Shown piece after piece: positions 1 through 42,080 of a stretch of 64,000 nucleotides of DNA. The position numbers and the translations under genes are program-made. The notes beneath the pieces are model-generated. The model saw only the letters and a program-made list of their open reading frames with translations, was not told the DNA's origin and did no database searches. Position 1 is the stretch's first letter; each line of letters opens with the position of its first letter. The DNA lies in assembly GCA_002269645.1 (NCBI GenBank), contig NIVC01003293.1, forward strand, positions 136,194 through 200,193, read 5' to 3'. The DNA comes from Macrostomum lignano (Eukaryota).

Positions 1-4471
<4,471 letters not shown>

Positions 4472-5274: not shown

Positions 5275-6869
5275 AACGAGTTTTCCAAAATCAAATCTAT
5301 GAAGTAAAAATCGCTAAGAGATATGCGTCTCCATAAATCAATCTGAAACTTAATGCAAGCAGGGATTAATTACAGTATGTTTATGTAATGCCGTCGCTTC
5401 CGACTCTTTGATGACTACTGCTGCTGCCTACTAACTCTCCCTCTGGCTGTCCTTAACAACTTGCACGGCAGGTAGCTGGCCTGAGTGGTCTAGCACTATG
5501 GTCCGAGAACCCTCGCTTAGTCTCTATCAGGTTACAATTAGATATTAAACTGAGTTGGTAGTTGGGTTGCTGCCACCTTGTAGGTCTACAGGTGTCGAAT
5601 AGACAATAAACTAAAACTAACAATATGTGATTGGTGGTGCAGAAAGGAAGGAGGGGAAAGAAGTGAAGGACCTAAGCCGCGGGTTGAAGTTGTATTTATA
5701 CTAACAATGATGAACAGGCCAGCCAAATTGTCTGTGGTAAATGAACGGTTACGATAGTCTGTGGGAAAGGCATGGTAGACAAAGGGAGACGGCTAACTGA
5801 AAAGTACAAGGTAATAGAAAGTACAAATATTTGGAGGATGTAAATCCGACAACAGGTAATATCCTTGACAGGCTATCCCTAGGTAGGCCTACTGTAAGTA
5901 GAAAATAAATAAGACAAGGCAAGTCAGTTAAACGTTTATTAATGTGAGTAACGGTCACAGGCCGATCCTAAATTATCGTTCAATTGCTCAGCTGGTGTCG
6001 CAGTAACCAGCCCTAAGCCTTATTAGGTGTCAATTTGATGTTGCCCCATAGCGTAGGTTGTAGGCCTTGAGACCAGACGGGTCCAGACGGTGTTGAAGGT
6101 CTGGCGTGCTGTCGACACAATAGCCTGCGGCAGTCTTAATGAGCAATGGCAGCTGCTAGGTTATCCCTAGGAAAAGCGTCTAGCGAATCTGCCTAAGCTA
6201 GTCCGTCTAGGAAAAGCATCTAGGAATACTAGCTCTTGCTCGAAGCCAAGCAGGCGGTCTCCGAACGGATGGTCTCTTTTGGGCCCTCACCTACTCCGTA
6301 TTTATACTAAAATCTGGGGCGGGCTCAGGGCCAATAGAAAGCTCAGAATCAGTTCCGTGGCAGATCTCGAGGCAGTTCCGTGGACTACCCGGAGCCAGGA
6401 ACGATCTCGGAGATGTCCATAAGACATCTGCCTCATCACGAGTGCTCCGCATGGCCTACTGGTACACTGCTTACATGTTGCAGCATGCAAGGAGTGCAAC
6501 CAAGACCCCACGAGAGCCTACCCCGGGCGGAGAGCTATGCTCTCGTTCCCGCAGACTAACAGAGACTGTACTAAGGGAGAAATATCCCACTGACTAACAT
6601 TCTATTTTTAGCCCATTGCAGCCTGCGCCAGGGCTCAAGTGATGAAGCTCGAACTCTGCTCCAGTTTCCGCAGTCGAAATACAATATTGACTGCGCGGCA
6701 TCTTCTTTAGCCAAGAGATAAGCAGACCGCTCGTTCGTTCTTTTTCTTGCAAAATAATAATTTTTAAATAAACAACACGTAAGCTTGCAGGACCTTGTAC
6801 AGCCATTATTGTTAGTCTCTTTGGTAAAATACTGTTCAAAGCAAAAAAGCATCAGCACTGAAAGACAGC

Positions 6870-7162
6870 TATCTAACCAAGAAATCAGCACCCCCCGTGA
6901 GCTTTGGCTCAAAGCATCCCAGCAACCTCCATGAGCCACAGCATTTCTGCAACCCTCCCCATGAGCCAATTGACATCTCAGCAATTCCCCCATGACTCTT
7001 TTATGGTTGACAGGGCGATTATTTTATAATTGAACCCTTAACCCTAACTCTAACCAAATTGCCCATGATCGCTTTGGGCCACAGCATTTCCGAAAAATCG
7101 GTTGAGCCGTTTTTTTAAAACCAATCACACAGATGCCGACTAATGATGTTTAGTATAGTCGA
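6870..7162 (-). mobile_element. Short copy of the local non-autonomous Helitron-like family (mirrored at about 9014-9305 +)
   Basis: A|TCgactatactaaa 5' end at 7162, the aaaatcggttgagccg core and degenerate ttgacatctcagcaattccc repeats are shared with the long copies. The 3' CTAG end is degenerate. Confidence 0.6.
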
Positions 7163-7715
7163 TTACATGAGGTACAAAAGTATTATAGAACGGCTTTTTT
7201 GCACCTGGAATTCAAACGCTCAATCGAAGCTGAAAAATTTAAAGCATGAAACATAAGCAACTTAAATCAGTTGGTAGAAGAGAAGAAACAACAGTCATGT
7301 CGTGAAGCTTCTGAAAATGGAGGCTAGTTATTCGTTTTTTAGAAAAAAATCTTGCATATTTCTGGGAAGTGGGAGAAGTTATTCTAACAAGGAATTTCGT
7401 GTAATGAATAGCGAGGAAGGTCGAAGGTGCGGCAATAGTGACGAACAGCAGTGGCAAACCGAAAAGTATTTACAGCACTCAACTACGACAGGATCGGTGA
7501 CTAAAAAAGGGAGACAAAAGGGCGAGTCGGAGGCAGCCGCTGGCCTGAGCAGCCCCGCGCGGTATAAAAACCACTCAATGGTTGGGTAGGGGCTGCTCAA
7601 GCACCCACGGACAGAGACAGCACTGAACAGAGGAGATGCTGCTCATAAAGAGATATACTGAATTAAATGCAGCTTACTTACTTACTTACTTACTACTGAC
7701 GGGGGGCGCAGGCGC

Positions 7716-8505
<790 letters not shown>

Positions 8506-10080
8506 CTGCATTTAATTCAGTATATCTCTTTATGAGCAGCATCTCCTCTGTTCAGTGCTGTCTCTGTCCGTGGGTGCTTGAGCAGCCCCTACCCAACCAT
8601 TGAGTGGTTTTTATACCGCGCGGGGCTGCTCAGGCCAGCGGCTGCCTCCGACTCGCCCTTTTGTCTCCCTTTTTTAGTCACCGATCCTGTCGTAGTTGAG
8701 TGCTGTAAATACTTTTCGGTTTGCCACTGCTGTTCGTCACTATTGCCGCACCTTCGACCTTCCTCGCTATTCATTACACGAAATTCCTTGTTAGAATAAC
8801 TTCTCCCACTTCCCAGAAATATGCAAGATTTTTTTCTAAAAAACGAATAACTAGCCTCCATTTTCAGAAGCTTCACGACATGACTGTTGTTTCTTCTCTT
8901 CTACCAACTGATTTAAGTTGCTTTGTTTCATGCTTTAAATTTTTCAGCTTCGATTGAGCGTTTGAATTCCAGGTGCAAAAAGCCGTTCTATAATACTTTT
9001 GTACCTCATGTAATCGACTATACTAAACATCATTAGTCGGCATCTGTGTGATTGGTTTTAAAAAACGGCTCAACCGATTTTTCGGAAATGCTGTGGCCCA
9101 AGGCGATCATGGGCAATTTGGTTAGAGTTAGGGTTAAGGGTTCAATTATAAAATAATCGCCCTGTCAACCATAAAAGAGTCATGGGGGAATTGCTGAGAT
9201 GTCAATTGGCTCATGGGGAGGGTTGCAGAAATGCTGTGGCTCATGGAGGTTGCTGGGATGCTTTGAGCCAAAGCTCACGGGGGGTGCTGATTTCTTGGTT
9301 AGATAGCTGTCTTTCAGTGCTGATGCTTTTTTGCTTTGAACAGTATTTTACCAAAGAGACTAACAATAATGGCTGTACAAGGTCCTGCAAGCTTACGTGT
9401 TGTTTATTTAAAAATTATTATTTTACAAGAAAAAGAACGAACGAGCGGTCTGCTTATCTCTTGGCTAAAGAAGATGCCGCGCAGTCAATATTGTATTTCG
9501 ACTGCGGAAACTGGAGCCGAGTTCGAGCTTCATCACTTTGGCACTGAAGAAGATCAGCTGCATTCTTGTTCTAGCAAAGAGCTACTTAAAGAGAAAAGAA
9601 AAATGATAAACATACTGTAAATAATCCTTGCTTGCATTACGCTCGAAGCTGTACATCATCAACTTGTCGAAACGGCTTTCTTGGTAAAGAGAATTATTGC
9701 AACATCATGATTAAAATCTGAATACCTTCAAAAGATTATGTTTAGTATTCGCCGAAAACATACTCTTGAATCTTCAATTCAGGAATAAATGAGATGTAAT
9801 ATTCGAGGGGAAAAAACAGCCAAAATTTCTTTCATGTTTTACATCCTGCGAAAAATGAATTGAATGGAATCTGAAATAGAAAAATTAAATATCGATGAGC
9901 ACTTTTAGTCACGAATTTGCTGATTAGAGTTTTTTTGAAGCTTACTTGAAGTAGTTAGCTCAATGTTCATAGCAATGAATTAAAAACTGTAATATCAATT
10001 AAATGATAGAGTTCCAACGGCTTGAGAGTTCAGAGATACCTCGGCAGCGGCCGCTCGGGCCAGGCCTGATGCGAGGGCAA

Positions 10081-10718: not shown

Positions 10719-11226
10719 ACGAATAGGAATCCTTCAGTGCCCAGGACTTTGACGGCGGCAAAACCCTCGGTTTAGCCTGGCTAAGGGCTACCTGCAATAA
10801 GTTAATCTCGTGCGGATTGGTTTATGTGAGTACAGGCTCGTACCTGTTGCTTTCTTACTACCTGGTTGAGAGTTACAAACCAACACAGAAGACAAGTTTG
10901 CACGAACTTCTCCGGTGCAGGACAAGTACCCGGAAGAGATCTCCACCGCTCTGGTTCTGACCCACGAGATCGGGCACAACCTCGGCTTCGAGCACATGCA
11001 GGACTTCCCTGCGTGCCAGTGCAATCGGTCGTCAACCGGCTGCATAATGAACTCTTATCTCGCGTCTGCGACTCGGTGAGTGTAGAAATTTAACAGTTTA
11101 CAGAAATTTGAACAGCTGTGAGCTGGTATCGATTTTACAATCGATTTCCCATGCTCCACCCCAGCATGGAAGCTCTGGGCTGGTCATCCTGCTCCTTGGA
11201 CGCCTGGAGCTCGCAAGCCAGCGAGA

Positions 11227-12255
11227 CAGACCGACACAAACAGACACAGACAGACACAGACAGACACACAGAGACACAAACAGACACAGACAGACACAGA
11301 CAGACACAGAAAGACACAGACAGACACAGACAGACACAGACAGACACAGACAGACACAGACAGACACAGACAGACACAGACGCAGGCAGACACAGACAGA
11401 CACAGACTGACACAGACAGACACACAGAGGCACAAACAGACACAGACGCAGGCAGACACAGACAGACACAGACAGACACAGACAGACACAGACAGACACA
11501 GACAGACGCAGGCAGACACAGACAGACACAGACAGACACAGACAGACACACAGACAGACACAGACAGACACAGACGCAGGCAGACACAGACAGACAAAGA
11601 CAGACACAGACAGACACACAGACAGACACAGACAGACACAGACGCAGGCAGACACAGACAGACACAGACAGACACAGACAGACACAGACAGACACAGACA
11701 GACACAGACAGACACAGACAGACACAGACAGACACAGACGCAGGCAGACACAGACAGACACAGACTGACACAGACAGACACACAGAGGCACAAACAGACA
11801 CAGACGCAGGCAGACACAGACAGACACAGACAGACACAGACAGACACAGACAGACACAGACAGACACAGACAGACGCAGGCAGACACAGACAGACACAGA
11901 CAGACACAGACAGACACACAGACAGACACAGCCAGACACAGACGCAGGCAGACACAGACAGACAAAGACAGACACAGACAGACACACAGACAGACACAGA
12001 CAGACACAGACGCAGGCAGACACAGACAGACACAGACAGACACAGACAGACACAGACAGACACAGACAGACACAGACAGACACACAGACAGACACAGACA
12101 GACACAGACGCAGGCAGACACAGACAGACACAGACAGACACAGACAGACACAGACAGACACAGACAGACACAGACAGACACACAGACAGACACAGACAGA
12201 CACAGACGCAGGCAGACACAGACAGACACAGACAGACACAGACAGACACACAGAC
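11227..12255. repeat. ~1-kb compound (CAGACA/CAGA/CAGACG)n microsatellite
   Basis: Directly visible; accounts for the long low-complexity ORFs at 11098-12269. Confidence 0.97.
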
Positions 12256-17633: not shown

Positions 17634-20600
17634 ATGTCAAAGAATCAAGTGGCAGCCTGTTTCCACGTTAAGGCGGACTCTGGGATGCCAGGCGAAGCGC
17701 CTCATCAGCCAGCGGCATCAGTTGAGGAGATTCTCTCCAGCTTCATCAAGTACGCCAGCCACAGCGGCATGCTGCCCGGCATGCAGAGGCAGGGTGCCAA
17801 GCGCACCGTGTTGACCGCTCTGGCAGTGCTGGCCAATGTCTTGATCTATGCCGAGTGTCTGGCTACCATGGTGATGTTCTTGCGCCTGCCAACGGCCCTG
17901 GATGCAAGCACAACTTTGCTGGTTGTGTCCATCATCTTTCACTCCTACTGTGCCTCGATCAGCTCTCTGTTCATATGGTCCAGCTGCTCGGGAAGGCTGA
18001 GCAGCTTTCTGCTCGATGTGGACGCAATACTGGCTGATTCGAGAGGCGTGCCTCAGCTGGAGGCGGCACTGCGACAGCGGTTCTTTCAGTACAAGGGTCT
18101 GCTCAGGAAGTTCTTTGCAGCGTTTTTCACTGCCGTAGTGATCAACTCGATCATGAGCGTGACCCTCATCATCATGGCTCCGAACCAGGTTCCTTTCATG
18201 TTCAACATCCGCATTGCGATGTTCGGCTCTGCAGGGACCGGTCACCTGCCAGCAGTCCACCAGGCTCCCTGGGCGCAGGTGGCCAGCCAGGTTGCCGCTT
18301 CGGTCTGGTGGATCTACAAGTCACTCCTGTGGAACTTCGGGTTTCTGCTCTTCTTCACCCTAGCTTGCATCCCTACCCACCTGCTGCTGGGCTACAGTTC
18401 GGGGCTCGCGGCCCAAGTTCGAGAATCCCAGGGACTCACGGGAGACGCAGCCGCGGCCTATCGACTTTTCTATTTAAGGATCGCGGGCGCAGTTGAATCC
18501 GCTGACGCCATCGTACGCCTGTACCTGTGCGCCACCTTCCTGTTTAGCATCGTGGCCGTGATGTTCAACGTCAATGCTTTGATAGACATGAGCCAGGTGG
18601 ATCAGCTGGTGACCTCAATCCTGGCCGTGTGGATCGGATCCAGCCTTCTGCTGCTTTGCCTGCCAGTTTTCATGTGCGGCAGAGTTTTGGTTCTGGTGAG
18701 GGCACGAAGCAGCTGCAAATCTTGTAGCTTGCGAGCTTCTTTGGATTAGTTTATCAAGATTTATTTGGATTAAGGTCTTTTCTTATCTAGGTGTTATTTC
18801 AACTTTTGCTACACCAGAACTGAGCAAGACATTCACATGAAATTCAAGGACACGGGCTAAAGTTTTGTTGCGACAACTTCTCAAAAAAGAATCAGGAGTG
18901 TCCTTTGAATTCCCTTTGGAATTCAACGATTCTGCCAGAAGTTCGGATTTTTCCCATAAATACACTTCTGTGTGCCAATCAGCACCGCGTCTCAGTGCGG
19001 CCTTGCCAAGCCTTCAAACTTCTTCAGCATGTCAAGCGCACGTGTCTGCATCATATCTGATTTCGGTGGCCTCCGACCTTCAAATCCTCAAAAATGGCTC
19101 AACCGATTTTCTTCAAACTTGCACCATTCGATCAGAAATTTTCCTGGGACGGTACATGCATCTTGGCTAAGAAATTGCTCAATGTTAAAGGGATTAAATA
19201 TTCGAAAAACATGCTTTTTTGAAAAGGTCAAGCCAAATTTTTGACTTGAATTGCATTGTAAGAATGCTAGAGAAAAAACTGACTGACTGAATTTATATTC
19301 TGATAAATATTACATCACAACAAGTTGAAAACAGTGTCGAAGAAATGCGCACAAGACTTGATTAAAATTGCGTAACCATATTGCTAACTTCAATTGAGAC
19401 GGATACTGGCTGACTGAGAAATTGATTATGTCATACCTTTTTACACTAAACGACTTGCTGTAAGTATTGAATTATAAGGGCCAAAATTCATGTTCTCCAA
19501 TTGAAAAGAGATAGTCTAGATGCGAACAGACTGGACTGCTAATGTAGCGACCTGGGTTCGAATCTTAGTAGTGCAAAATAATTTTTATATTAAAGCACCT
19601 TAAAAACACGAAACTGCTAAACATAAAAGAAGCACAATGTCAAACATTGAAGAGCCACCATGTAAAACATAAAAGAGTCACTATTTCGAACATTAAAGAG
19701 CCACCACGTCGAACATTAAAGTGCCACTATGTCAAACATTAAAGCGCCATCATGTCAAACATGTATGTGACTGCATGTCAAACATAAAAGAGCCACCATG
19801 TCAAACATTAAAGAACCACCATGTCGAACATTAAAGAGCCACCATGTCGAACATTAAAGAGCCACCATGTAGAATATTAAAGAGCCACTATGTCAAACAT
19901 TAAAGAGCCACTATGTCAAACGTAAAAGTGACTTTATGTCAAACATATCAGTGTTTTTATGTCAAACATTAAAGAAGCACCATTTCGAACATTAAAAAGC
20001 CACCATTTCGAATATTAAAGAGCCACCATGTCAAACATTAGAGAGCCACCATGTCAAACATAAGAGAGCCACCATGTCAAGCATAAAATATACACAATTT
20101 CAAACGTAAAAGTATTGCAAGCCAATGCCAATTTTTAGTCATGCCAATTTTTAGGGAGCCACTATAAAGCTAAGGAAATTGTCGCACTAGCTACTTTTGT
20201 CTGGTGGATGCTTGCTATTTGGGGATACTTGCTATCTGGGGGGGGGGTGCTTGCTATCTGGGGGATGCTTGCTATCTGGGGGTGCTTGCTATCTGGGGGA
20301 TGCTTGCTATCTGGGGGATGCTTGCTATCTGGGGGATGCTTGCTATCTGGGGGATGCTTGCTATCTGGGGGATGCTTGCTATCTGGGGGATGCTTGCTAT
20401 CTGGGGGATGCTTGTTATCTGGGATGCTTGCTATCTGGGGGATGCTTGCTATCTGGGATGCTTGCTATCTGGGGGATGCTTGCTATCTGGGGGATGCTTG
20501 CTATCTGGGATGCTTGCTATCTGGGTGATGCTTGCTATCTGGGGGGTGCTTGCTATCTGGGTGATGCTTGCTATCTGGGGGATGCTTGCTATCTGGGGGT

Positions 20601-23600
20601 GATTGCTATCTGGGTGATGCTTGCTGTCTTGGGATGATTTCTTTTTGCATTGCACTTCATTTGAGCAGTTTGTCGGTTTTCTTTGTGAAGGTTTTTTTGT
20701 ATGTCAAATATTAAACAGCCACCATGTCAAACATATACGTGACTACATGTCAAACATAAAAGAGACACCATGTCGAACATAAAAGAGCCACCATGTCGAA
20801 CATTAAATAGCCACCACGTCAAACATTACAGAGCCACCATGTCGAACATTAAAGGGCCACTATTTCAAACATTAAAGAGCCACCATGTCAAACATTAAAG
20901 AGCCACCATGTCAAACATAAAAGAGCCACTATGTCAAAAAAACACGTGACTTCATGTCAAATATTAAAGAGCCACCATGTGAAACATACACGCGACTCCA
21001 TCTCAAACATTAAAGAGCCACTATGTCAAACATAAAAGAGCTACCATGTCAGACATAAAAGAGCTACCATGTCAAATATACAAAAGCCATCATGTCAAAC
21101 ATAAAAGGGACACCATGTCGAACATAAAAGAGCCACCATAGAGAACATTTAAGAGCCACCATGTCAAACAATAAAGAGCTACCATGTCAAACATAGAAGA
21201 GCCACCATGTTAAACATAAAAGAGCCACCATGCCAAACATAAAAGAGCCATCATGTCAAACATATATGTGACTCCATGTCAAACAGTAAAGAGCCACCAT
21301 GTCAAGCATAAAAGAGCCACCATGTCGAACATAAAAGAGCTACCATGTCGAACATAAAAGAGCCACCATGTCAAACATAAAAGAGCCACCATGTCGAACA
21401 TAAAAGAACCACCATGTCGAACATAAAAGAGCCACCATGTCAAACATTAAAGAGCCACCATGTCAAACATTAAAGAGCCACCATGTCAAACATATATGTG
21501 ACTCCATGTCAAACAGTAAAGAGCCACCATGTCAAGCATAAAAGAGCCACCATGTCGAACATAAAAGAGCCACCATAGAGAACATTTAAGAGCCACCATG
21601 TCAAACATTAAAGAGCTACCATGTCAAACATAGAAGAGCCACCATGTTAAACATAAAAAAGCCACCATGCCAAACATAAAAGAGCCACCATGTCAAACAT
21701 ATATGTGACTCCATGTCAAACAGTAAAGAGCCACCATGTCAAGCATAAAAGAGCCACCATGTCGAACATAAAAGAGCCACCATGTCGAACATAAAAGAGC
21801 CACCATGTCGAACATAAAAGAACCACCATGTCGAACATAAAAGAACCACCATGTCAAACATTAAAGAGCCACCATGTCAAACATTAAAGAGCCACCATGT
21901 CGAAGATTAAAGAGCCACCATGTCTAACATTATAGAGCCACCATGTCGAACATTAAAGAACCACCATTTCAAACATTAAAGAGCCATCATTACATTAAGG
22001 TGCCACCATGTCAAACATTAACGAGTCACCATGTCAAGTATATTCGTGACTCCATGTCAAACATAAAAGAGCCACCATGAAGAACATTAAAGAGCCACCA
22101 TGTCAAACATTAAAGAGCCACCATAAAAGATACACAATTTCAAACGTAAAAGTAAGCGTCATGCCAATTTTAAAGGAACCACTGTAGAGCTAAGGAAATT
22201 GTTGCACTAGCTACTTAATGTCTGGGGGAAGCTTGCTATTTGGGGGATGCTTGCTATCTGGGGGATGCTTGCTATCTGGGGGATGCTTGCTATCTGGGGG
22301 ATGCTTGCTATCTGGGGGACCTGGGTTCGAATCTTAGTAATGCAAAATAATTTTTTTATTAAAACACCTTGAAAACACGAAACTGCTAAACATAAAAAAA
22401 GCACAATGTCAAACATAAAAGAGGCACCATGTCAAACATTACATGGGCACCATGTAAAACATATACGTGACTCTATGTCAAACATTAAAGAGCCACCATG
22501 TAAAACATAAAAGAGTCACCATTTCGAACATTAAAGAGCCACCACGTCGAACATTAAAGTGCCACCATGTCAAACGTAAAAGAGCCACCACGAAGAACAT
22601 TAAAGAGCCACCATGCCAAACATAAAAGAGCCACCATGTCAAACATTAAAGATCCACCATGTAGAATATTAAAGAGCCACTATATCAAACATTAAAGAGC
22701 CACTATGTCAAACGTAAAAGTGACTTTATGTCAAACATATCAGTGACTTTATGTCAAACATATAGGTGTTATTATGTCAAACATTAAAGAACCACCATTT
22801 CGAACATTAAAGAGCCACCATTTCGAACATTAAAGAGCCACCATGTCAAACATTAGAGAGCCACCATGTCAAGCATAAAATATACGCAATTTCAAACGTA
22901 AAAGTATTGCAAGCCAATGCCAATTTTAAGTCATGCCAATTTTAAAGGAGCCACTATAAAGCTAAGGAAATTTTCGCACTAGCTACTTATTGTCTGGTGG
23001 ATGCTTGCTATTTGGGGATACTTGCTATCTGGGGGGGGGTGCTTGCTATCTGGGGGATGCTTGCTATCTGGGGTGCTTGCTATCTGGGGATGCTTGCTAT
23101 CTGGGGGATGCTTGCTATCTGGGGGATGCTTACTATCTGGGGGATGCTTGCTATCTGGGGGATGCTTGCTATCTGGGTGATGCTTGCTATCTGGGGGATG
23201 CTTGCTATCTGGGGGATGCTTGCTATCTGGGGGATGCTTGCTATCTGGGGGATGCTTGCTATCTGGGGGATGCTTGCTATCTGGGGGATGCTTGCTATCT
23301 GGGGGATGCTTGCTATCTGGGTGATGCTTGCTATCTGGGGGATGCTTGCTATCTGGGGATGCTTGCTATCTGAGGGATGCTTGCTATCTGGGGATGCTTG
23401 CTATCTGGGGGATGCTTGCTATTTGGGGGATGCTTGCTATCTGAGGGGTACTTGCTATCTGGGGGATGCTTTCTCTCTGGGTGATGCTTGCTGTCTTGGG
23501 ATGATTTCTTCATTTGAGCAGTTTGTCGGTTTTCTTTGTGAAGGTTTTTTTGTATGTCGAATATTAAACAGCCACCATGTCAAACATTAAAGAGCCACCA

Positions 23601-26132
23601 TGTCGAACATTAAAGAGCCACCATGTCAAACATTAAAGAGCCACCATGACAAACATTAAAGAGCCACCACGTCAAACATTAAAGAGCCACCATGTCGAAC
23701 ATTAAAGAGCCACTATGTCAAACATTAAAGAGCCATCATGTCAAACATTAAAGAGTCACCACGTCAAACATTAAAGAGCCACCATTTCGAACATAAAAGA
23801 GCCACTATGTCAAACAAACACATGACTTCATGTCAAATATTAAAGAGCCGCCATGTGAAACATACACGTAACTCCATCTCAAACATTAAAGAGCCACTTT
23901 GTCAAACATAAAAGAGCTACCATGTCAGACATAAAAGAGCCACCATGTCAAATACACAAAAGCCATCATGTCAAACATAAAACAGCCACATATACGTGAC
24001 TTAATGTCAAACCTTAAGGAGCCACCATGTCGAGCATTAAAGAGCCACCATGTCGAACATTAAAGAGCCACCATGTCAAACGTAAAAGGGTCACCATGCC
24101 AAACATAAAAGAGCCACCATGTCAAACATAAAAGAGCCACCATTTTAAACATATACGTGACTCCATGTCAAACATTAAAGCGCCATCATGTCAAACATAT
24201 ATGTGACTGCATGTCAAACATAGAAGAGCCACCATGTCAAACATAGAAGAGACACCATGTCAAACAAAAAGAGCCACCATGTAATATATAAAAGAGCTAC
24301 CATGTAAAATATAAAAGGGCCATCATGTCTAACATTTACGTGACTCAATGTCAAACATTAAAGAGCCACCATGTCGAACATTAAAGAGCCACCATGTTAA
24401 ACATAAAAGAGCCACCATGCCAAACATAAAAGAGCGACCATGTCAAACATATACGCGACTCCATGTCAAACATTAAAGCGCCATCATGTCAAACATATAT
24501 GTGACTGCATGTCAAACATAAAAGAGCCACCATGTCAAACAAAGAAGAGACACCATGTCAAACATAGAAGAGCCACCATGTCAAACATAACAGAGACAAC
24601 ATTTCAAACGTAAAAGGGCCGCCATGGTGAACATAGAAGAGCCACTATGTCAACATTAAAGAGCCACCTTTTTAAACATAAAAGAGACAACGTTTCAAAC
24701 ATAAAAGAAGTGTCATGCCAAACAAAATGGAGCCACTATAAATCTAAGGAAATTGTTGCACTAGCTACTTTCTCTGGTGGATGCTTGCTATTTAAGGATG
24801 GATACTTGCTATCAAGGGGATGCTTGCTATCGGAAGGATGCTTGCTACTGGGGTAACTTGCTATTGGGAGATGCTTGCTCTTGGGGGGTGGAGGGTAATT
24901 GCTATCTAAGAGGGGGTTGCTAGATATCTATAAGGTCTCTTTGTATCCAGGTTAATGCTTGCTATCTGGGGTTGCTTGCGGTCTGGGGATGCTTGCTATC
25001 TGGGGATGCTTGCTATCTGGGGATGCTTGCTATCAGGGGTTGCTTGCAGTCTCGGGGATGCTTACTATCTGGGGTCTGGGGGATGCTTGCTATCTGGGGG
25101 ATGCTTGCTATCAGGGGTTGCTTGCTATCGGGGGGATGCTTGCTATCTGGGGGATGCTTGCAGTCTGGAGGATTTCGCTATTTGGGGATCGATGCTTGAA
25201 TGCTGTCTGAGGATGCTTGCTGTCTTGGGATGTTTTGTTTTTAGAGGGAATGTCTGTTGTTTTTTATGAAGGCTTTATTTTGCTGTCTATTTGTTATTTG
25301 TAAAGAACAAGGATTCTATCCAGATGTCCCCCATCGGGGGGCAAATATTGCTAGTTCTTAACTAAATTCTTAACTAGTCTCTCAAGCATTCAGTCATCAT
25401 CCTAACGCACTTTCTGCAGATAGCACCTGTGACTATTGTCTGGCAATAAAAAGTTAATCCTGACCTTGAGTTTCGTATGCCTGCGAGAAGGACTGGACAG
25501 CGCGGGAAACGTATTTCGATTGGTTGCATAAGAGAAGTTAAGTTACTGGGGCTATGAGACTCAAGATACGAGCTAGCAACACACAGTCGCTAATATGAGG
25601 ATTGTCCAACGCGTATTGCACTATCGCCAGGTTCCACGAACCGCGCATGCAGTTAGCAAAGGTTTCACTGTCCGGTGAATTAAGAAATCTGCTTTTAATT
25701 TGCAGGTCAAGAAGCCTTTAAACGTTCTGCAGCGGCAAGAGATCACGAAAAATAACTTTAAAGAGGTAAATCGGTTATCAGCATCAACTATTTAGCTTAT
25801 CCAAGCATTCCTACGCACCTTACCGGTTGAATTCAATTCCCAGCTTCTAGTGCTTCTGGAGGTGGTGAACAGCAGCAGCTGCGGCATCACCTGCGCCGGC
25901 CTCTTCACCATTGACTATTCGCTGATTCCAAGCGTGAGCCACATCAACCTCGTGTTGCTTCTTTACTCCGAAATTAGGTTATAAACTTGATGCTGCAGCT
26001 GTTTTATTATTGAAATTTCAGCTCACCGGACTGCTGCTGACGTACTTCATTCTGATTGTGCAGACACGGCAGGGCGCTGGCGGCCCCGGCTGTCCCAGTG
26101 GGGGCGGCGCTTTCAACGGCTCAGCGCTCTGA
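17634..26132 (+). CDS. Gustatory-receptor-like (7tm_7/GRL-type) seven-transmembrane protein, 440 aa, 4 exons
   Basis: Exons 17634-18695 (multiple TM helices), 25706-25765, 25844-25933 (LLVLLEVVNSSSCGITCAGLFTIDYSLIPS) and 26022-26132 (LTGLLLTYFILIVQTR..*). All three introns are GT-AG and phase 0. The C-terminus matches the GR-family GxFxxD and TYxxxxxQ signatures. Confidence 0.87.
19084..25354 (+). mobile_element. Satellite-filled non-autonomous Helitron-like element inside GR intron 1
   Basis: Family core gctcaaccgatttt near 19097, tRNA-like segment at 19508-19567, internal arrays, and a 3' hairpin CCCCC-ATC-GGGGG (25328-25340) followed by CTAG|T at 25351-25355. The 5' boundary is uncertain. 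Confidence 0.72.
19549..25260. repeat. Higher-order satellite: alternating ~21-bp (AAAGAGCCACCATGTCAAACA) and ~18-bp (GGGGGATGCTTGCTATCT) arrays in a duplicated ~2.77-kb unit
   Basis: 21-mer arrays at about 19630-20100, 20715-22125, 22400-22880 and 23570-24730. 18-mer arrays at about 20200-20635, 22220-22317, 22990-23500 and 24770-25230. The unit head gacctgggttcgaatcttagta recurs at 19549 and 22318. Confidence 0.93.
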
Positions 26133-26291
26133 GTGACAGCTGCATGAATGAAAAGAGAGTGGAGAAAATTGACAGCAAACAAAATCTTCACTGATGATCA
26201 ATGGAAGACCGCTTGAACTAGATCTACCATCTAAGATACAATTGAAACCGAAGAATAGCCAATCATCCTGCCGGGCATTCCACTGTTGACC

Positions 26292-26347
26292 CTAAACCTA
26301 ACCCTAACCCTAAACCTAACCCTAACCCTAACCCTAACCCTAACCTA
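26292..26347. repeat. Interstitial telomere-like (TAACCC)n
   Basis: About 9 units with TAAACC variants. Confidence 0.85.
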
Positions 26348-26963: not shown

Positions 26964-27120
26964 ACTCCTGTGGAAGTTCGAGTTTCTGTTCTTCTTCACC
27001 TTAATTTGCATCCCTACCCACCTGCTGCTGGGCGACTGGGTTCGCGGCCCAAGTTCGAGAATCTCAGGGTCTCACGGGGGACGCAGCCGCGACTTATCGA
27101 TTTTTCTATTTAAAGATCGC
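26964..27120 (+). pseudogene. Frameshifted fragment of the GR-like gene
   Basis: Aligns to 18323-18484 (LLWKFEFLFFFTLICIPTHLLLG versus LLWNFGFLLFFTLACIPTHLLLG), then has small indels. Confidence 0.88.
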
Positions 27121-28486: not shown

Positions 28487-31214
28487 ATGGCAGGTAAGTT
28501 CCGCTCTCACTGCCTGATTTTCCCCGGGCACGCACGAAGCTGTACGGCATTCAATCCGCAAATTTCAGGTGCACTGCTGCTCACTCTCTCCATCCTGGCT
28601 GCTGGAGCTGCAGCAGACACTGAGTACACGCACGTGTGGGACTCCGCTGACATGGCGCTGGGCTGCAGGCCATGGCTGTCTGTGCAGGTGAAGACCGGAG
28701 ACCTCACCGAGTTGCACAACATTACCTTCACTTTGTCCACCAGGTGAGAATTTGGTTTGACTTTGTCTGCCTTTCANNNNNNNNNNNNNNNNNNNNNNNN
28801 NNNNNNNNNNNNNNNNNNNNNNNNNNNNNNNNNNNNNNNNNNNNNNNNNNNNNNNNNNNNNNNNNNNNNNNNNNNNNNNNNNNNNNNNNNNNNNNNNNNN
28901 NNNNNNNNNNNNNNNNNNNNNNNNNNNNNNNNNNNNNNNNNNNNNNNNNNNNNNNNNNNNNNNNNNNNNNNNNNNNNNNNNNNNNNNNNNNNNNNNNNNN
29001 NNNNNNNNNNNNNNNNNNNNNNNNNNNNNNNNNNNNNNNNNNNNNNNNNNNNNNNNNNNNNNNNNNNNNNNNNNNNNNNNNNNNNNNNNNNNNNNNNNNN
29101 NNNNNNNNNNNNNNNNNNNNNNNNNNNNNNNNNNNNNNNNNNNNNNNTCGGTGGCCGCCGCGTTGTAGGTCTGGTGCCAGCGGGCGAGGCAGTGGCGGCG
29201 GACGGCAGCCTGCGCGGCAGCCAACGGGATGGGCGCGGTGCCTTGCGCCAGCGTGGAGCCTCGCTTGGCGATCTCGTCCACGGCCTCGTTGACGGGGATT
29301 CCCGCGTGGCCAGGCACCCACTGCAGGTGGACCGAGGTTCTCCGGGCCGCGAGGTCGGCGAGGCTGGCCCAGACGGCGTCGATCATGGTGGTGCCCGTCG
29401 ACCCGGGGCCGGACGCGAGCGCTCAGGGAGTCAGAGCAGATGCGGACCGGCGACAGCTCTGCCGGGTCCGGGCCGCGAGCACCCACCTAAGGGCCTCGGC
29501 GATGGCCACTAACTCGGCGTGGAAACTAGACGTCACGTGGCCAGCAGCGACGCACAGCGTGGTGTCGGGCTCGACCAGGACGCCGCTGCCGCCGTCCAGG
29601 ATGCCGTCCTTTGCCGCTCCGTCGGTCCAGACCACAATGCCGGCGGGCGGCAGGGCGGCAAGCGTCTGCTCCGCCGCAGCTCTCCGGGCCTCCGGCAGGT
29701 CACCCCGCGAGGTCGGGGAGGCCAGCTGCAGCCCAAAGGTGACGGAGTCCAGAACAGCCCAGGGAGGTGTCGTCGGGACAGCGTGGACGGGCTCTCACGG
29801 GGAGCCGCCCAGGCCCGCAGCGCTGCATACGCTGGCCGCCGTCTCGCGCCAGCCGCGGGCGCTTTGGAGGCGGCGGCGCGGGGCCAACGCTGGCCGCGCA
29901 GGCGCGCAGCGGGTTGTCATGCGGCAGCCTGAGGGCGCGCTCGTGGAGGAGGCCAGCGTGCATCTCCGCGCGGACTGCCATCGGCGGCAGTCCAGCCTCG
30001 CGCTCCAGCACCTCCGACCTGGTGTTCCGCGGACACCCGGTGATGATGCGCGCGCCCAGGCGCTGGGCTCGGTCCAGGTGGTCGATAGCCGTCTTGCAGG
30101 CCGTCGGCATCCAGGCGCCGGCAGCGTACTCCAGCACCGGCCGCACGTAGGCCGTGTAGAGCTGGCGCACGTCGCTCTGCTTGGCGCCCCAGTTTCTGCC
30201 AGACAGCGCCGCCAGGACGCCGCAGCGGGCGCGGGCGCGGCCGGCGACGTTGGCGGCGTGCGCTGAGAAGCTGAGCAGCCGGTCCAGGATGACGCCGAGG
30301 AAGCGCGGCTGGCGGTCCGTCGAGAGCGGGGAGGAACTTCCCCTCGTAAGCCTTGGGGTTTCAGCAATTCCCTCCCATAAGCCTTGACATCTCAGCGATC
30401 CCCCCCCGAAGAGTCACAGCATTATAGAAATTTCCCCCAAGCCTTGGGATCTTAACAATTCCCAAATGAATATTTCATGTTCGACATGACGCTTCCTTTA
30501 TGTTTGACATCGCTTCTTTTTGTTTTACATGAAGCTTCTTTTATTTTTGACATGACACTTCCCCTTCTATTTTTTACGTGACGCTTCTTTTATGATTTTT
30601 TCTTTTCCTTGAGTTTTTTTTTTCTCCCAAAATTTGAACCCAATTCGCTGCATTTGCAGTTTAGTCCACGGAATAAAAATATAATATATAAAATGCTCGT
30701 AAATAATGTATATTCTGCGGTTCCGTCTGTTTACGTCTAGGCTAGCTCTAATCCAACTGATGACATGAATTTTAGCAGTAAAAATAAAAATTCACATCAA
30801 GTTGGTTAGATCACAGAAATCAGTAATGACGTGATCAATTTCTCAATCATTTAGTACGAATGTAAACATATGATACAGACAGATATGTATCAGTCTATTA
30901 AAGGTAAAAATATGGTTACGCAATCTCAATCAAGTCCTGTGTTTTGCTTCCACATCGTGTTTTCAAACTGTTTTTTGAAAACCTTAAAACTTAAAACCTT
31001 AAAACATTAAAACCTGATGCAATCCTTACCAGAATCAGAACTCAGTCAGTCAGTTTTTTTCTCTAGCATTCTTAAAATGCATTTTAAAGTCGAAAAGTCA
31101 GCTTGACCTTTGCAAAAAGCATGCTTTTTGAATAATTATTCCTTTATAAAAATTCATAAAGTTTAATAAAAATCGGTTGAGCCGTTTGTCAAATCAATCA
31201 CATACCTAGGTACC

Positions 31215-34200: not shown

Positions 34201-37200
34201 AGACAGCTTGGAGAGGTGTCTGTAATGCAGTATTCCCATCAGCCTTGTCCTGCTCCTACTATATATAGAAAGAGACGTGAAGCATCGCAGACCAGAGCCC
34301 GTAGACCCACTTTGTCTTATAGTTCGTAATTCACATGCATGCTGGAATGCCAATGCAAGCGCTGTGTATGCACATAAGAAACAAAAATCTTACGCTCTAA
34401 GGGCAATAATTTGTTGCAAAAAATTGAATTTAGTCCATCACAAAATTAACAACTAAACTAACTGCCAAATAAAAGCACAAAAACCTATTTTTTTTAAACA
34501 GGATGCGGTGTGGGACAGTGGAATCCCGACCTGCGTGTCGCTGCCGTGCACTCAGATGCCCGTCTATCCAAACGAAACAGCCGTCATAAAAAGCTTTACA
34601 TTCAGAAGCGTCACTTACAATTTTGCTGATGGCCAGCTTCTTGTGCACCTCTTGTCGAATGGAACCTTTCGTCCAGGCGACAAGATCGAGATCGAGTGCA
34701 AATTGGGGTTTACAGGCTCCAGCCAGACCGCCTCCTGCATGCCTGGCGGAAGCTGGAGCCCCGTCACCATGGACTGCAGCCCCGGATACTGCGGCGGCGT
34801 CTCCGTCCCTCCGACGGTGGCCAACTCGCAGGCCAACGCCACCCTCGGAAACACCTCCTGGGAGGGCGCCAGCCTCGCCTTCACCTGCAACACAAACTAC
34901 AGCGTCGGCGGCCTCCCCAACGGATCTGTCAGCTTCGTCATCAGCTGCATCAACAGCAGCTGGACCTCGTTCGCCCACCTGAACTGTCGACCGACCGCCT
35001 GCTCGAGTCTGCCGCCGGGACTGGGAAACTCCAGCCTGTACAGCTCGCTGAACCTCGAGCAGGAGCTGCAGACGGGTCTGCCGGCTTCAGGAGTGCAGGT
35101 CGACGACAGCCTCAGCTACGAGTGTCGGCCCGGCTTCGTTCGGACGACGCAGAACCGGCGATTGAGCATCTTCTGCAGGCTGGGAGACCGCTGGGAGCCG
35201 GACGTTCCCGGTCCGTGCCAGCTGCTCAACTGCTCACAGCCGGATGCCATCGTGCTGCAGCCTCAGGCTGCTCGCATGACCGTCATCAATGCATCGTTCA
35301 ACTTTGCTAACAGCTCGCACCTGCCCTACACAAGTTTGGTGCGGCTGAGCTGCGAGGAGCCGTACTTTGCCATGCCGGGCAGCAGCGAGCTGGCCGTGTG
35401 CGGACTGTCAGACGGAGATCCGCCTGCGGCAGTGTGGCGCAGCGTCGGCTCAAATGTGGCCTTCAGCTGCCGCAGTAAGCAGCTTGTCATTATTGCTTCT
35501 AATCCGAAACTTGGAGTGGTGGCTTGCAAAAGAATGTACACCAATCTGGGCAATCTAGTTATAGATACCGGTTTTATAATATTTGTATTAAACTGCCATC
35601 ATTTTTAATAACAAGCCATCTCCGAATCTTTTGTAGAGCACTGCAACAACAGTCTCTTGGCGCAGCTGGTGGGATTCGGACTCGTCGACTTCCCCACCAG
35701 CTCCTACACGGATCCCGACCGAGTTGCCAACGTCACCTGCCTTTCGAACGCCTTCGCTCCGCTGGCGGCGAACGTCAGTCTACAGAGCGACTCGCAGTTC
35801 CTCCTACAGGCGGTCTGCACTGCCGGTGACTGGACGGTGCTCAACCAGCTGCTGCTGCCGACATCGGAGACTCTGTGCCAGCCGAAGCCCTGTCTGTTGC
35901 CTACCAACCTGAGTCGATCTACAGCCGTGCCCAGCAACAACCTGGGAAACGTGACTACGGGAGACGGTCAGGTGTACCTGCCAGTGAACAGCAGCGTGGA
36001 AGTGAGGTGCTGGCCCAACAGCCGCTTCGTGGACGCGTACGCGAGCTCTCGGACGGCGACATGTGAAGCAGGTTTGATTTTTCTCATTTTTGCTGCTAAA
36101 TCTGGTTGCTAGCTCGTATAATTTTTCATCAAAATTTGTATCATTTAGGAATTTAATAGACAAATGTACTCGTAATAGCTCGTATATAGGATTCTTTAAA
36201 TTTTCAATGCCAACTATTACCTTACCTGATTCTTGAAATCGAATAATCAATTTACTGATAGTTTATAGAAGTGCTTTTCGTGTGGATAAATAAAAATCGC
36301 CTAGGAATGACATGAGCAATTGGCAGGACAATTACCAGACAAACAAGTAAGCAACTAACCCAGGCACATGAAATAAATTAACAACGCATATTTCTCAGGC
36401 CCCCAGTGGAGCACAGATGGCTCCATGAACTGCCAGCCGATCGTCTGTCTGGACAGCCAATTTGGTCCTAAAATGGATCCCAGCATTCTGGTCGGTCCTC
36501 TGAACGCCTCCATCCTGGCCGAGTCTGCGACCGGGCCGTTCCTCATCGGAGACCAGGTGGCCTTCGCGTGCCGGGAGAACATCTCACAATCAGGTCCCGT
36601 TCTGCTCAACTGCACCGCTGATTTGAACTTCACGGGCATTTGGCAGCCGAATGCTGTAGAGCCTTTCTGTCCAAGTAATTTAATGCTATGTGCGTTGATC
36701 AGAGAAGAGTCTTTTTATTATCAAACGCTCTTATGCGCAACAAATGTAAACAATCCACAGGACACTGCAGCAACAGTCAGTTAGATCAGACTACGGGAGA
36801 CGGTCAGGTGTACCTGCCAGTGAACAGCACCGTGGAAGTGAGGTGCTGGCCCAACAGCCGTTTTGTGGACGCGTACGCGAGCTCACGGACGAAGACATGC
36901 GAGCTAGGTCTGATTCGATCGTTATGGAAATATTTTTCTTTGCCAGTTCTTTAAGCTCCGAGGGCAGTTTCGAATCTAAAACTCCAGCTAAACGGGCGAC
37001 TTTATCCTGAGTTTCTGGGATTAATTATTTGTAAATCTAGGTCATTGAAATTTTAAAACCGTACCTCACGAATCTCATCTGCAGGACTTTGACAGAGCGC
37101 GTGCGTAAGGGTGTACGTAGCATTACCGAAATAAAAAGCAATAAGTTAGGAATCACGAACATAATTCGCCCTAAATGATAAAGATTTTAACTGTGTACTC

Positions 37201-40929: not shown

Positions 40930-42080
40930 TTTCATTAGTTTTTATATGAGGCTTCTATGATTTTTTCATGACGCTTCTATGCTAACATGACGCTTCTATG
41001 CTTGTTTACATGACGCTTTTATGATTGTTTACATGACGCTTTTATGATTGTTTACATGACGCTTCTATGATTGTTTACATGACGCTTGTATGATTGTTTA
41101 CATGACGCTTCTATGATTTTTTACATGACGCTTCTATGATTTTTACATGACGCTACTATGATTTTTACATGACGCTTCTATGATTTTTTCATGACGCTTC
41201 TATGATTTTTACATGACGCTTCTATGATTTTTACATGACGCTTCTATGATTTTTTACATGACGCTTCTATGATTGTTTACATGACGCTTCTATGATTGTT
41301 TACATGACGCTTCTATGATTTTTAAGACGCTTTTATGATTTTAACATGACGCTTCTATGATTTTTTACATGACGCTTCTATGATTGTTTACATGACGCTT
41401 GTATGATTGTTTACATGACGCTTTATGATTTTAACATGACGCTTCTATGATTGTTTACATGACGCTTCTATGATTTTTACATGACGCTTCTATGATTTTT
41501 ACATGACGCTTCTATGATTTTTTCATGACGCTTCTATGATTTTTACATGACGCTTCTATGATTTTTACATGACGCTTCTATGATTTTTTACATGACGCTT
41601 CTATGATTGTTTACATGACGCTTCTATGATTGTTTACATGACGCTTCTATGATTGTTTACATGACGCTTTTATGATTGTTTAAATGACGCTTCTATGATT
41701 TTTACATGACGCTTCTATGATTGTTTACATGACGCTTCTATGATTGTTTACATGACGCTTCTATGATTGTTTACATGACGCTTGTATGATTGTTTACATG
41801 ACGCTTCTATGATTTTTTATGACGCTTTTATGATTTTAACATGACGCTTCTATGATTTTTTACATGACGCTTCTATGATTGTTTACATGACGCTTGTATG
41901 ATTGTTTACATGACGCTTGTATGATTTTAACATGACTCTTCTATGATTGTTTGCATGACGCTTTTATGATTTTAACATGACGCTTCTATGATTGTTTACA
42001 TGACGCTTCTATGATTGTTTACATGACGCTTCTATGATTGTTTACATGACGCTTGTATGATTGTTTACATGACGCTTCCA
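40930..42080. repeat. ~20-21-bp satellite (ACATGACGCTTCTATGATT[G]TTT)
   Basis: About 55 tandem units. Confidence 0.96.

What the first reader, a model, noticed from the sequence alone, without database searches (positions are those of the whole stretch)
17634..26132. Hidden complete gustatory-receptor-like gene with the ancestral three phase-0 introns, split by a 7-kb satellite intron
The ORF track shows only a 371-aa orphan membrane ORF. Splicing at 18695 to three small exons 7 kb away restores the GR/GRL C-terminus (CAGLFTID..LLTYFILIVQT). Three phase-0 introns near the 3' end are the known ancestral arrangement of the insect GR superfamily. The host is clearly a non-model invertebrate. If it is a flatworm (inference), a GRL is notable because the family is poorly documented there. 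Automated annotation would likely truncate this gene.
Basis: partly seen in the sequence, partly recalled or inferred. Interest (0 to 1): 0.7.

Follow-up and report, generated by a model that had tools for sequence, protein, structure and literature searches.

The report
Flatworm-type gustatory-receptor-like gene, four exons
The 371-codon "orphan" reading frame is the first exon of an intact four-exon gene for a gustatory-receptor-like ion-channel subunit, and its last membrane helix lies 7 kb away behind a repeat-filled intron; this is an ordinary family member from a poorly documented host group, probably a Macrostomum-like flatworm.

Summary
The observation and the interpretation both hold.

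**Gene model.** The ORF 17634..18749 is real. Splicing 18695>25706, 25765>25844 and 25933>26022 uses GT..AG sites, all in phase 0, and gives a 440-aa protein.

**Family evidence.**
- The ORF alone has no Pfam hit. The three small exons alone score 22.5 bits against 7tm_7. The C-terminal 168 aa spanning the 7-kb junction score 35.3 bits (cut-off 26.6).
- A profile built only from homologues finds three significant fragments in the whole window: the ORF, exon 3 and exon 4. Nothing lies inside the intron.
- The closest relative is a Macrostomum lignano protein that UniProt names "Gustatory receptor". It aligns without gaps over 160 residues across all three junctions.
- The three intron positions fall in the same alignment columns, in phase 0, in nemertean and bivalve GRL genes. 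An annelid and a tardigrade share two of the three.
- The AlphaFold model matches only insect GR/OR/Orco structures.

**Intron 1.** It is 7010 bp and filled by a transposon-like fragment plus 23-bp and 18-bp minisatellite arrays.

**Open points.** Expression, function and the exact host species are untested.

**Verdict.** A new member of a known kind, of modest interest.

The parts
17634..18695 (+). Exon 1 (1062 nt, residues 1-354): N-terminus and TM1-TM6
   Evidence: The ORF begins at the first ATG after a stop codon. The donor is CTG|GTGAGG in phase 0. The homologue profile matches it at E 3e-26. Six hydrophobic segments lie at about residues 58-80, 92-115, 160-183, 228-252, 293-315 and 326-352. 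GC3 is 0.72. A long first exon is also found in the Owenia (1167 nt), Solemya (1053 nt) and Ramazzottius (1098 nt) GRL genes.
18696..25705 (+). Intron 1 (7010 bp, phase 0), expanded by repeats
   Evidence: It has GT..AG ends. Its position is shared with the Lineus, Solemya and Ramazzottius GRL genes at alignment columns 576|577, where the intron measures 522, 329 and 220 bp. GC is 0.41. No GRL-like coding fragment lies inside it.
18805..19600 (.). Dispersed-repeat (transposon-like) fragment inside intron 1
   Evidence: It matches other places in the window at 73-88% identity, including 49413-48881, 44431-44200, 44107-43856, 3527-3240 and 14594-14477. Two of those copies also sit next to 23-bp-period arrays or similar arrays.
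19619..25189 (.). Alternating 23-bp and 18-bp minisatellite arrays inside intron 1
   Evidence: Tandem Repeats Finder reports the arrays. A higher-order duplication, 19549-21875 versus 22318-24739, has 84% identity over 2.45 kb.
25706..25765 (+). Exon 2 (60 nt, residues 355-374, VKKPLNVLQRQEITKNNFKE): cytoplasmic extension after TM6
   Evidence: The acceptor is TTTGCAG| and the donor is |GTAAAT. 12 of 20 residues are identical to M. lignano P0012, with the same length. The AlphaFold model shows a continuous helix over residues 324-363 across the junction, with pLDDT about 90.
25766..25843 (+). Intron 2 (78 bp, phase 0)
   Evidence: It has GT..AG ends. It falls in the same alignment columns, 604|605, as introns in Lineus, Solemya and Owenia. 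M. lignano isoform P0001 departs from P0012 exactly here and continues with V..., as expected for read-through of a GT donor.
25844..25933 (+). Exon 3 (90 nt, residues 375-404, ...CGITCAGLFTIDYSLIPS)
   Evidence: The homologue profile matches it at E 4e-6. This exon is 90 nt in Lineus, Solemya and Owenia as well. It holds the invariant residues G388 and F395.
25934..26021 (+). Intron 3 (88 bp, phase 0), six codons before the TY of the TM7 motif
   Evidence: It has GT..AG ends. It falls in the same columns, 634|635, in Lineus, Solemya, Owenia and Ramazzottius.
26022..26132 (+). Exon 4 (111 nt including the TGA stop, residues 405-440): TM7 with the motif TYFILIVQT
   Evidence: The homologue profile matches it at E 6e-5. 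Pfam 7tm_7 positions 336-366 of 370 match the small exons. T411 and Q418 are invariant and Y412 nearly so.
26964..27120 (+). Frameshifted relic copy of part of exon 1 (pseudogene fragment)
   Evidence: It is 87% identical in DNA to 18323-18484 and carries a 5-bp deletion. tblastn hits fall in two different frames.

Best explanation
Window 17634-26132 (+) holds one intact four-exon gene. It encodes a 440-aa gustatory-receptor-like (GRL) protein of the seven-transmembrane ion-channel superfamily (insect GR/OR/Orco, Pfam 7tm_7).

Exon 1 encodes the cytoplasmic N-terminus and TM1-TM6. Three short 3' exons encode the cytoplasmic stretch after TM6 and TM7, which carries the family motif.

The three introns are the conserved phase-0 introns of the family. 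The first has grown to 7 kb through the insertion and amplification of a repeat element that carries minisatellites.

By inference from solved insect relatives, the product would assemble into a tetramer whose TM7 helices line a cation pore. It would serve as a ligand-gated (or otherwise stimulus-gated) sensory channel subunit.

The host is most likely a flatworm related to, but not identical with, Macrostomum lignano.

Shown here: the gene structure, family membership, fold, predicted topology and intron homology. Inferred: splicing in vivo, channel function, a sensory role and the host identity.
For: - Canonical GT..AG sites, all phase 0, give an uninterrupted 440-aa frame.
- Pfam 7tm_7: no hit for the ORF alone; 22.5 bits for the three small exons alone; 35.3 bits (E 1.1e-8, cut-off 26.6) for the 168 aa across the long junction, colinear with profile positions 219-366.
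- An exhaustive phmmer search of 1.84 billion representative proteins gave 11 hits. The named ones are 'Gustatory receptor' proteins (M. lignano, Plectus, Ramazzottius); the rest are uncharacterised spiralian proteins with the same C-terminal motif.
- M. lignano A0A1I8J294 (P0012) aligns without a gap to residues 262-421, with 73 of 160 identical, across all three junctions and with equal exon lengths.
- The intron positions are identical by alignment column and phase in four other phyla.
- A six-frame scan with a profile that excludes the window's own sequence finds only these pieces, in order.
- There are seven hydrophobic segments. K+R counts are 21 on the N-terminal side against 3 on the other, which predicts the N-in topology of the family.
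- The AlphaFold model has pTM 0.67 and pLDDT 80-93 over TM4-TM7. Foldseek's top 22 PDB hits are all insect GR/OR/Orco (BmGr9 8vc2 E 2e-7, TM-score 0.65; Orco 6c70 E 1e-4). The next hit has E 0.14.
- GC3 is 0.71 in the small exons and 0.72 in exon 1, against 38-42% GC in the introns.
Against: - There is no RNA evidence, so the 7-kb splice is inferred.
- The whole-protein 7tm_7 score (24.6 bits) is just under Pfam's cut-off of 26.6.
- The last motif residue is T, not F: TYFILIVQT. M. lignano shares this variant.
- Intron 1 is 13 to 30 times longer than in the relatives examined and about 80 times longer than introns 2 and 3, so it could impair splicing.
- The AlphaFold model is of low confidence over the N-terminus and TM1-TM3, and it was built from only 11 sequences.
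- The host assignment rests on two best hits at only 44% and 57% identity.
Confidence: 0.82

Rival explanations
1. A recently disabled gene. The repeat and minisatellite expansion of intron 1 prevents correct splicing. The locus then yields at most a 371-aa, six-helix truncated product that ends at 18749, and the 3' exons have not yet decayed.
For: - Intron 1 is 7010 bp, against 78 and 88 bp for the other two introns and 220-522 bp at the same position in relatives.
- The region is in flux: a frameshifted relic of exon 1 lies 830 bp downstream of the stop codon, and the window is full of satellites and transposon pieces.
- Read-through of the first donor gives a short in-frame tail and a stop.
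Against: - All six splice signals are canonical and the frames are intact.
- Every residue that is invariant or nearly so in the family alignment is retained in the small exons.
- Their GC3 equals that of exon 1.
- The minisatellite copies have diverged to 77-90% identity, so the insertion is not very recent, yet the exons show no decay.
Confidence: 0.12
2. Two remnants of a tandem pair. Exon 1 belongs to one GRL copy that lost its 3' end. Exons 2-4 belong to a second copy that lost its 5' end. The satellite block between them is intergenic.
For: Local duplication of GRL sequence has occurred, as the fragment at 26964-27120 shows.
Against: - The pieces are exactly complementary on the homologue profile, with no overlap and no gap: positions 54-322, then 321-344, 343-378 and 378-397.
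- No other 5' or 3' GRL piece exists in the 64 kb.
- Donor and acceptor phases match, and the junction residues align without a gap to the M. lignano protein.
- AlphaFold runs one confident helix across the junction.
Confidence: 0.04
3. Not a GR-family protein. It is a lineage-specific multipass membrane protein whose C-terminal resemblance is chance or convergent.
For: - The whole-protein Pfam score is sub-threshold.
- No PDB sequence is matched by phmmer.
- Identity to non-flatworm relatives is only 15-23%.
Against: - The structural search is specific to GR/OR/Orco, with a sharp cliff after those hits.
- The C-terminal 7tm_7 score is above the cut-off.
- Three intron positions and phases are shared with relatives.
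- The T, Y and Q residues of the TM7 motif are shared.
Confidence: 0.02

Closest known systems
Macrostomum lignano A0A1I8J294 ('Gustatory receptor', 180-aa fragment) and its isoform A0A1I8J111 (132 aa, named 'PRA1 family protein')
   Same: This is the best hit in 1.84 billion representative proteins (E 8.5e-21, 44% identity). It aligns without gaps over 160 residues across all three junctions. Exons 2 and 3 have the same lengths of 20 and 30 residues. It shares the TM7 variant TYhhhhhQT followed by RQ. The shorter isoform departs exactly at junction 2, which implies an intron at that point.
   Different: Identity is only 46% over the shared part, so it is a paralogue or comes from another species. 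The database entries are C-terminal fragments that lack TM1-TM4. The DNA of that locus could not be fetched, so its intron sizes are unknown.
Spiralian GRL genes: Lineus longissimus XP_064619349, Solemya velum KAL5017309 and Owenia fusiformis CAH1789215
   Same: They share the architecture of one long 5' exon plus short 3' exons, including a 90-nt penultimate exon. Phase-0 introns fall in identical alignment columns: all three in Lineus and Solemya, and two in Owenia. They also share the C-terminal block GLTxxGLFxID...TYFxxxVQ.
   Different: Identity is 17-20%. Their motif ends in QF, whereas here it ends in QT. Their first conserved intron is 0.3-0.5 kb, whereas here it is 7 kb.
Insect gustatory and odorant receptors with solved structures (BmGr9, Gr43a, Gr64a, MhOR5, Orco)
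   Same: The predicted fold is the same, with Foldseek probability 1.0 and TM-scores up to 0.66. There are seven helices with a predicted N-in topology. There is a Pfam 7tm_7 match. The family hallmarks of three 3' phase-0 introns and the TM7 motif are present (PMC9998090).
   Different: Sequence identity is 9-15%. No ligand, partner subunit or channel activity is known for this protein, and the F of the motif is replaced by T.
Non-arthropod GRLs with known roles: C. elegans LITE-1/GUR-3 and Nematostella Grl1 (recalled from the literature and cited in PMC5533540 and PMC7746228; not tested here)
   Same: They belong to the same superfamily outside the arthropods. They show that such proteins need not be taste receptors: their roles include light or peroxide sensing and body patterning.
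   Different: No direct comparison was made here. Neither appeared among the 11 hits.

Membership tests
GR/GRL family (7TM ion-channel superfamily, Pfam PF08395 7tm_7) | Significant match to the family profile | tested here: met
   The C-terminal 168 aa score 35.3 bits (E 1.1e-8), above the gathering score of 26.6. The whole protein scores 24.6 bits (E 1.9e-5), just below it. The ORF alone has no hit.
GR/GRL family | Seven transmembrane helices | tested here: met
   There are seven hydrophobic segments, and the AlphaFold model shows the corresponding long helices. TM7 is encoded only by the distant exons.
GR/GRL family | Inverted topology (cytoplasmic N-terminus, extracellular C-terminus) | tested here: met
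   The positive-inside count is 21 K+R in the N-terminus and loops 2-3, 4-5 and 6-7, against 3 in the other loops and the C-terminus. This is a prediction only.
GR/GRL family | TM7 motif TYhhhhhQF | tested here: inconclusive
   The motif here is TYFILIVQT. The T, Y, five hydrophobic residues and Q are present, but the final F is T. The M. lignano relative has the same variant (TYFVLIIQT). Variant motifs are accepted in the literature (PMC9998090, PMC7746228).
GR/GRL family | [quoted passage not shown] | tested here: met
   All three are phase 0. They fall in the same alignment columns as introns in Lineus and Solemya (all three) and in Owenia and Ramazzottius (two each). No insect gene was compared directly.
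GR/GRL family | Fold of the solved GR/OR/Orco subunits | tested here: met
   Foldseek against the PDB returned only GR/OR/Orco chains in ranks 1-22 (E 2e-7 to 7e-3, TM-scores 0.45-0.66). The next hit has E 0.14. The model's mean pLDDT is only 67.9.
GR/GRL family | Tetrameric ligand-gated cation channel activity | not testable with these tools
   This needs heterologous expression with electrophysiology or imaging.
GR/GRL family | Transcribed and spliced as modelled | not testable with these tools
   No RNA data for the source organism are on hand. Neither the exact model nor the ORF is present in the 15-billion-protein collection.

The most novel reading that the evidence does not exclude
Early-branching (macrostomorphan) flatworms may keep a small, very divergent GRL clade with all three ancestral introns and a TYhhhhhQT pore-helix variant, while planarians and schistosomes have lost the family.

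This clade appears not to have been described in the literature. The M. lignano entries are automatic fragment annotations. No paper in the searched library mentions both Macrostomum and GRL. Searches in Schmidtea and Schistosoma found no members (PMC3261222, PMC5533540).

If so, this locus would be the first full-length flatworm GRL gene model. It would date the loss of the family within Platyhelminthes.
Probability: 0.45. Interest if true: 0.45.

Novelty: new member of a known kind. Interest (0 to 1): 0.35.

Why it matters
There are two modest points.

1. Evolution. If the host is indeed a flatworm, the family's signature extends to Platyhelminthes: a long 5' exon, three phase-0 3' introns and the TM7 motif. 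The reported absence of the family from planarians and schistosomes then becomes a secondary loss inside the phylum.

2. Annotation. The only part of the protein that standard profiles recognise is TM7, which lies 7 kb away behind masked satellites. A gene finder that caps intron length or stops at repeats would emit a 371-aa orphan membrane protein and miss the family. The two M. lignano relatives are annotated as fragments, one with a wrong name. Counts of chemoreceptor genes in repeat-rich invertebrate genomes may therefore be too low.

Tried and rejected
- Word-index homologue searches found nothing useful. The single-sequence search gave no hit. The search with alignment A1 returned only the tardigrade protein already in the alignment.
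- phmmer against PDB sequences gave no hit. The relation to solved structures shows only at the fold level.
- Exact look-ups all came back empty: the 371-aa ORF, the 440-aa model, the THAP ORF and the Sushi ORF, and the loci of the two M. lignano proteins. The source genome could therefore not be named, and the M. lignano gene structure could not be read.
- Robertson 2015 is not held. The intron claim therefore rests on PMC9998090 and PMC7746228 and on my own mapping.
- Alternative 3' exons inside intron 1 or elsewhere in the window were looked for and none exist.
- A second GRL gene in the window was looked for. Only a 157-bp frameshifted relic was found.
- M. lignano itself as the source was considered and judged unlikely. 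The best identities are 44% and 57%, and no near-identical protein exists in a collection that holds its proteomes.


Full report
**Observation**

The ORF 17634..18749 (+, 371 aa) is in the sequence.
- CTG|GTGAGG at 18695, joined to TTTGCAG|G at 25706;
- GAG|GTAAAT at 25765, joined to TTCCCAG|C at 25844;
- AGC|GTGAGC at 25933, joined to ATTTCAG|C at 26022.

Exon lengths are 1062, 60, 90 and 111 nt. All three introns are therefore phase 0, and the joined frame gives 440 aa and a TGA stop at 26130-26132. Introns 2 and 3 are 78 and 88 bp.

Intron 1 is 7010 bp. It begins with a dispersed-repeat fragment (18805-19600) that recurs elsewhere in the window. It is then filled from 19619 to 25189 by alternating arrays of a 23-bp and an 18-bp unit. 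A roughly 2.4-kb block is itself duplicated at 84% identity. 'Satellite intron' is a fair description.

**Is the join real or wishful?** Five independent lines say it is real.

1. Pfam. The ORF alone, with or without its read-through tail, has no family hit at all. The 86 aa from the three small exons alone score 22.5 bits on 7tm_7, at profile positions 336-366 of 370. The 168 aa that span the 7-kb junction score 35.3 bits (E 1.1e-8), above the gathering score of 26.6, in one colinear stretch over profile positions 219-366. The whole protein scores 24.6 bits, just under the cut-off.

2. An unbiased scan. I built a profile from the ten homologues only and scanned all 3040 six-frame fragments of the 64-kb window. 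Three were significant: the ORF (3e-26), the exon-3 fragment (4e-6) and the exon-4 fragment (6e-5). The exon-2 fragment was a weak hit (E 12) that fits between them. The order of profile positions is 54-322, 321-344, 343-378 and 378-397. Nothing inside intron 1 or elsewhere competes.

3. A close relative. The exhaustive search of 1.84 billion representatives gave only 11 hits. The best is a Macrostomum lignano cluster. Its 180-aa member, which UniProt names 'Gustatory receptor', aligns to residues 262-421 without a single gap, with 73 of 160 residues identical. The alignment runs straight across all three junctions, and exons 2 and 3 have the same 20- and 30-residue lengths. Its 132-aa sister entry is identical up to '...NDKE' and then continues 'VSSW...'. 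That is what read-through of a GT donor at junction 2 would give.

4. Composition. GC3 is 0.72 in exon 1 and 0.71 in the pooled small exons. The introns that touch them have 38-42% GC.

5. Structure. AlphaFold runs one helix (residues 324-363) through the 354|355 junction at pLDDT of about 90.

**What it is**

The other hits are GRL-type proteins. They come from a bivalve (Solemya), an annelid (Owenia), a limpet (Patella), a nemertean (Lineus), a nematode (Plectus, named 'Gustatory receptor') and a tardigrade (Ramazzottius, named 'Gustatory receptor').

In the alignment the invariant residues are G388, F395, T411 and Q418, and Y412 is nearly invariant. These form the C-terminal block that ends in the family's TM7 motif. 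Here the motif reads TYFILIVQT. The canonical form is TYhhhhhQF (PMC9998090). The M. lignano relative has the same final T, so this looks like a lineage variant rather than damage.

The protein has seven hydrophobic segments. Lysine plus arginine counts are 21 on the N-terminal side of the membrane and 3 on the other. This predicts the cytoplasmic N-terminus that sets this superfamily apart from GPCRs.

The AlphaFold model was built from 11 sequences. It has pTM 0.67 and mean pLDDT 67.9. Confidence is 80-93 over TM4-TM7 and poor over the N-terminus, TM1-TM3 and the 183-209 loop. Searched against the PDB, its 22 best matches are all insect gustatory or odorant receptors or Orco: BmGr9 at E 2e-7 with TM-score 0.65, then Gr43a, Gr64a, MhOR5, AaegOR10 and Orco 6c70. 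The next match drops to E 0.14 and probability 0.18.

**The intron claim**

I fetched the genomic loci of four relatives and mapped their exons exactly onto the annotated proteins.
- The window's three introns fall between alignment columns 576|577, 604|605 and 634|635.
- Lineus and Solemya have phase-0 introns at all three of these column pairs.
- Owenia has the second and third. Ramazzottius has the first and third.
- The penultimate exon is 90 nt in Lineus, Solemya, Owenia and here.
- The last intron lies six codons before the TY of the motif in all of them.

[quoted passage not shown] I did not compare an insect gene directly. The overall architecture (1062 + 60 + 90 + 111 nt) is nearly that of Solemya (1053 + 69 + 90 + about 115 nt).

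The one unusual thing is the size of intron 1. It is 7010 bp here, against 522, 329 and 220 bp at the same site in Lineus, Solemya and Ramazzottius.

**Why intron 1 is large**

The 500-bp piece at 19090-19596 recurs in reverse orientation at 49413-48881 and at 44431-43856. In both places it also abuts long tandem arrays: a 23-bp unit at 45599-48849 and a 48-bp unit at 42501-43825. The reverse complement of the 18-bp unit occurs at 42238-42447. The simplest reading is that an element carrying minisatellites inserted into an ancestrally short intron and then expanded. This is an inference.

**Host**

The window is eukaryotic and very repeat-rich. It contains an assembly gap (28777-29147), a P-element/THAP-type transposase ORF, RNase H remnants and Sushi-repeat exons. 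The best relatives of two unrelated proteins are both from M. lignano: the GRL at 44% identity and the transposase at 57% over 99% of its length. Neither these ORFs nor the model are present as exact sequences in a collection that includes M. lignano proteomes. The source is therefore probably a different macrostomid or a neighbouring flatworm lineage.

**Mechanism (inferred)**

By homology with the solved insect receptors, four such subunits would form a channel in which TM7 lines the pore, with TM5-TM7 contributing the contacts between subunits. A stimulus acting on the extracellular-facing pocket of the helical bundle would open a cation path.

Which stimulus is unknown. Family members outside the arthropods include light and peroxide sensors and a developmental gene, so 'taste receptor' should not be assumed. 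I put about 0.8 on the gene model and family assignment, and lower, unquantified confidence on a chemosensory role.

**Rivals**

- The main rival is that the expanded intron has disabled the gene, so the locus now yields only a six-helix truncation. This cannot be excluded without RNA. It is disfavoured by intact signals and frames, the retained family-invariant residues, the matching codon bias and the evident age of the arrays, whose copies are 77-90% alike.
- A 'two half-genes' reading is disfavoured because the pieces are exactly complementary, with no overlap and no gap, and no other pieces are present.
- A frameshifted 157-bp relic of exon 1 at 26964-27120 (87% identity, 5-bp deletion) shows that local duplication has happened.

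**Novelty**

GRLs are known across protostomes, including molluscs and annelids, and UniProt already labels M. lignano fragments automatically. Published searches found no members in Schistosoma mansoni or Schmidtea mediterranea (PMC3261222, PMC5533540). No paper in the searchable library mentions both Macrostomum and GRL.

This is a new, full-length member of a known family from a poorly documented host group.

Noticed in passing
window 26289-26345: There is an interstitial telomere-type repeat, (CCCTAA) x 9.5, that is (TTAGGG)n on the other strand. It lies 157 bp downstream of the GRL stop codon.
   Followed up: no
window 26964-27120: A 157-bp relic copy of GRL exon 1 is 87% identical to 18323-18484 and carries a 5-bp deletion that shifts the frame. 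No other GRL parts lie around it.
   Followed up: yes
window 40941-42089, 42238-42447, 42501-43825, 45599-48849, with flanks 43856-44431 and 48881-49413: This is a second, AT-rich block of long minisatellite arrays with 23-bp and 48-bp units. It includes the reverse complement of the intron's 18-bp unit. It is flanked by copies of the same 500-bp dispersed repeat that precedes the arrays in GRL intron 1. This suggests a transposable element family that carries and spreads minisatellites.
   Followed up: partly
window 59539-61008 (-): An intact 489-aa ORF has THAP, P-element HTH and TNP-like RNase H N-terminal domains, so it is a P-element/THAP9-type transposase that lacks the C-terminal domains seen in longer relatives. 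Its best hit is M. lignano BOX15_Mlig025972g2 at 57% identity.
   Followed up: partly
window 6637-7715 and 8463-9538: A 1079-bp inverted repeat at 99.4% identity encloses about 750 bp, and an RNase H-like ORF (7636-8052) runs from the end of its left arm into that spacer. It is either an element with long inverted ends or a palindromic assembly artefact.
   Followed up: no
window 34508-38161 and 62753-63843: Large exons encode Sushi (complement control) repeats (Pfam E 2e-18). A diverged, partly frame-broken second copy sits near the window's end, so the extracellular-protein gene is duplicated.
   Followed up: partly
window 125-514 and 11118-12250: Two ORFs share the same 37-residue start ([37 protein letters not shown]). 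The first continues with a disintegrin-like CGNGILEAGEQCDCGP motif. The second runs into a 1-kb (ACAGACAGAC)n array.
   Followed up: no
window 28777-29147 and 29200-30400: An assembly gap of 371 N sits inside a GC-rich retrotransposon-like region, which has an RNase H-type ORF at 28565-29386 (-).
   Followed up: no
proteins P0001 and P0012 (M. lignano, UniProt A0A1I8J111 and A0A1I8J294): Both database entries for the closest relative are C-terminal fragments that start at the residue matching window residue 262. One is named 'PRA1 family protein', which looks like a mis-annotation.
   Followed up: partly
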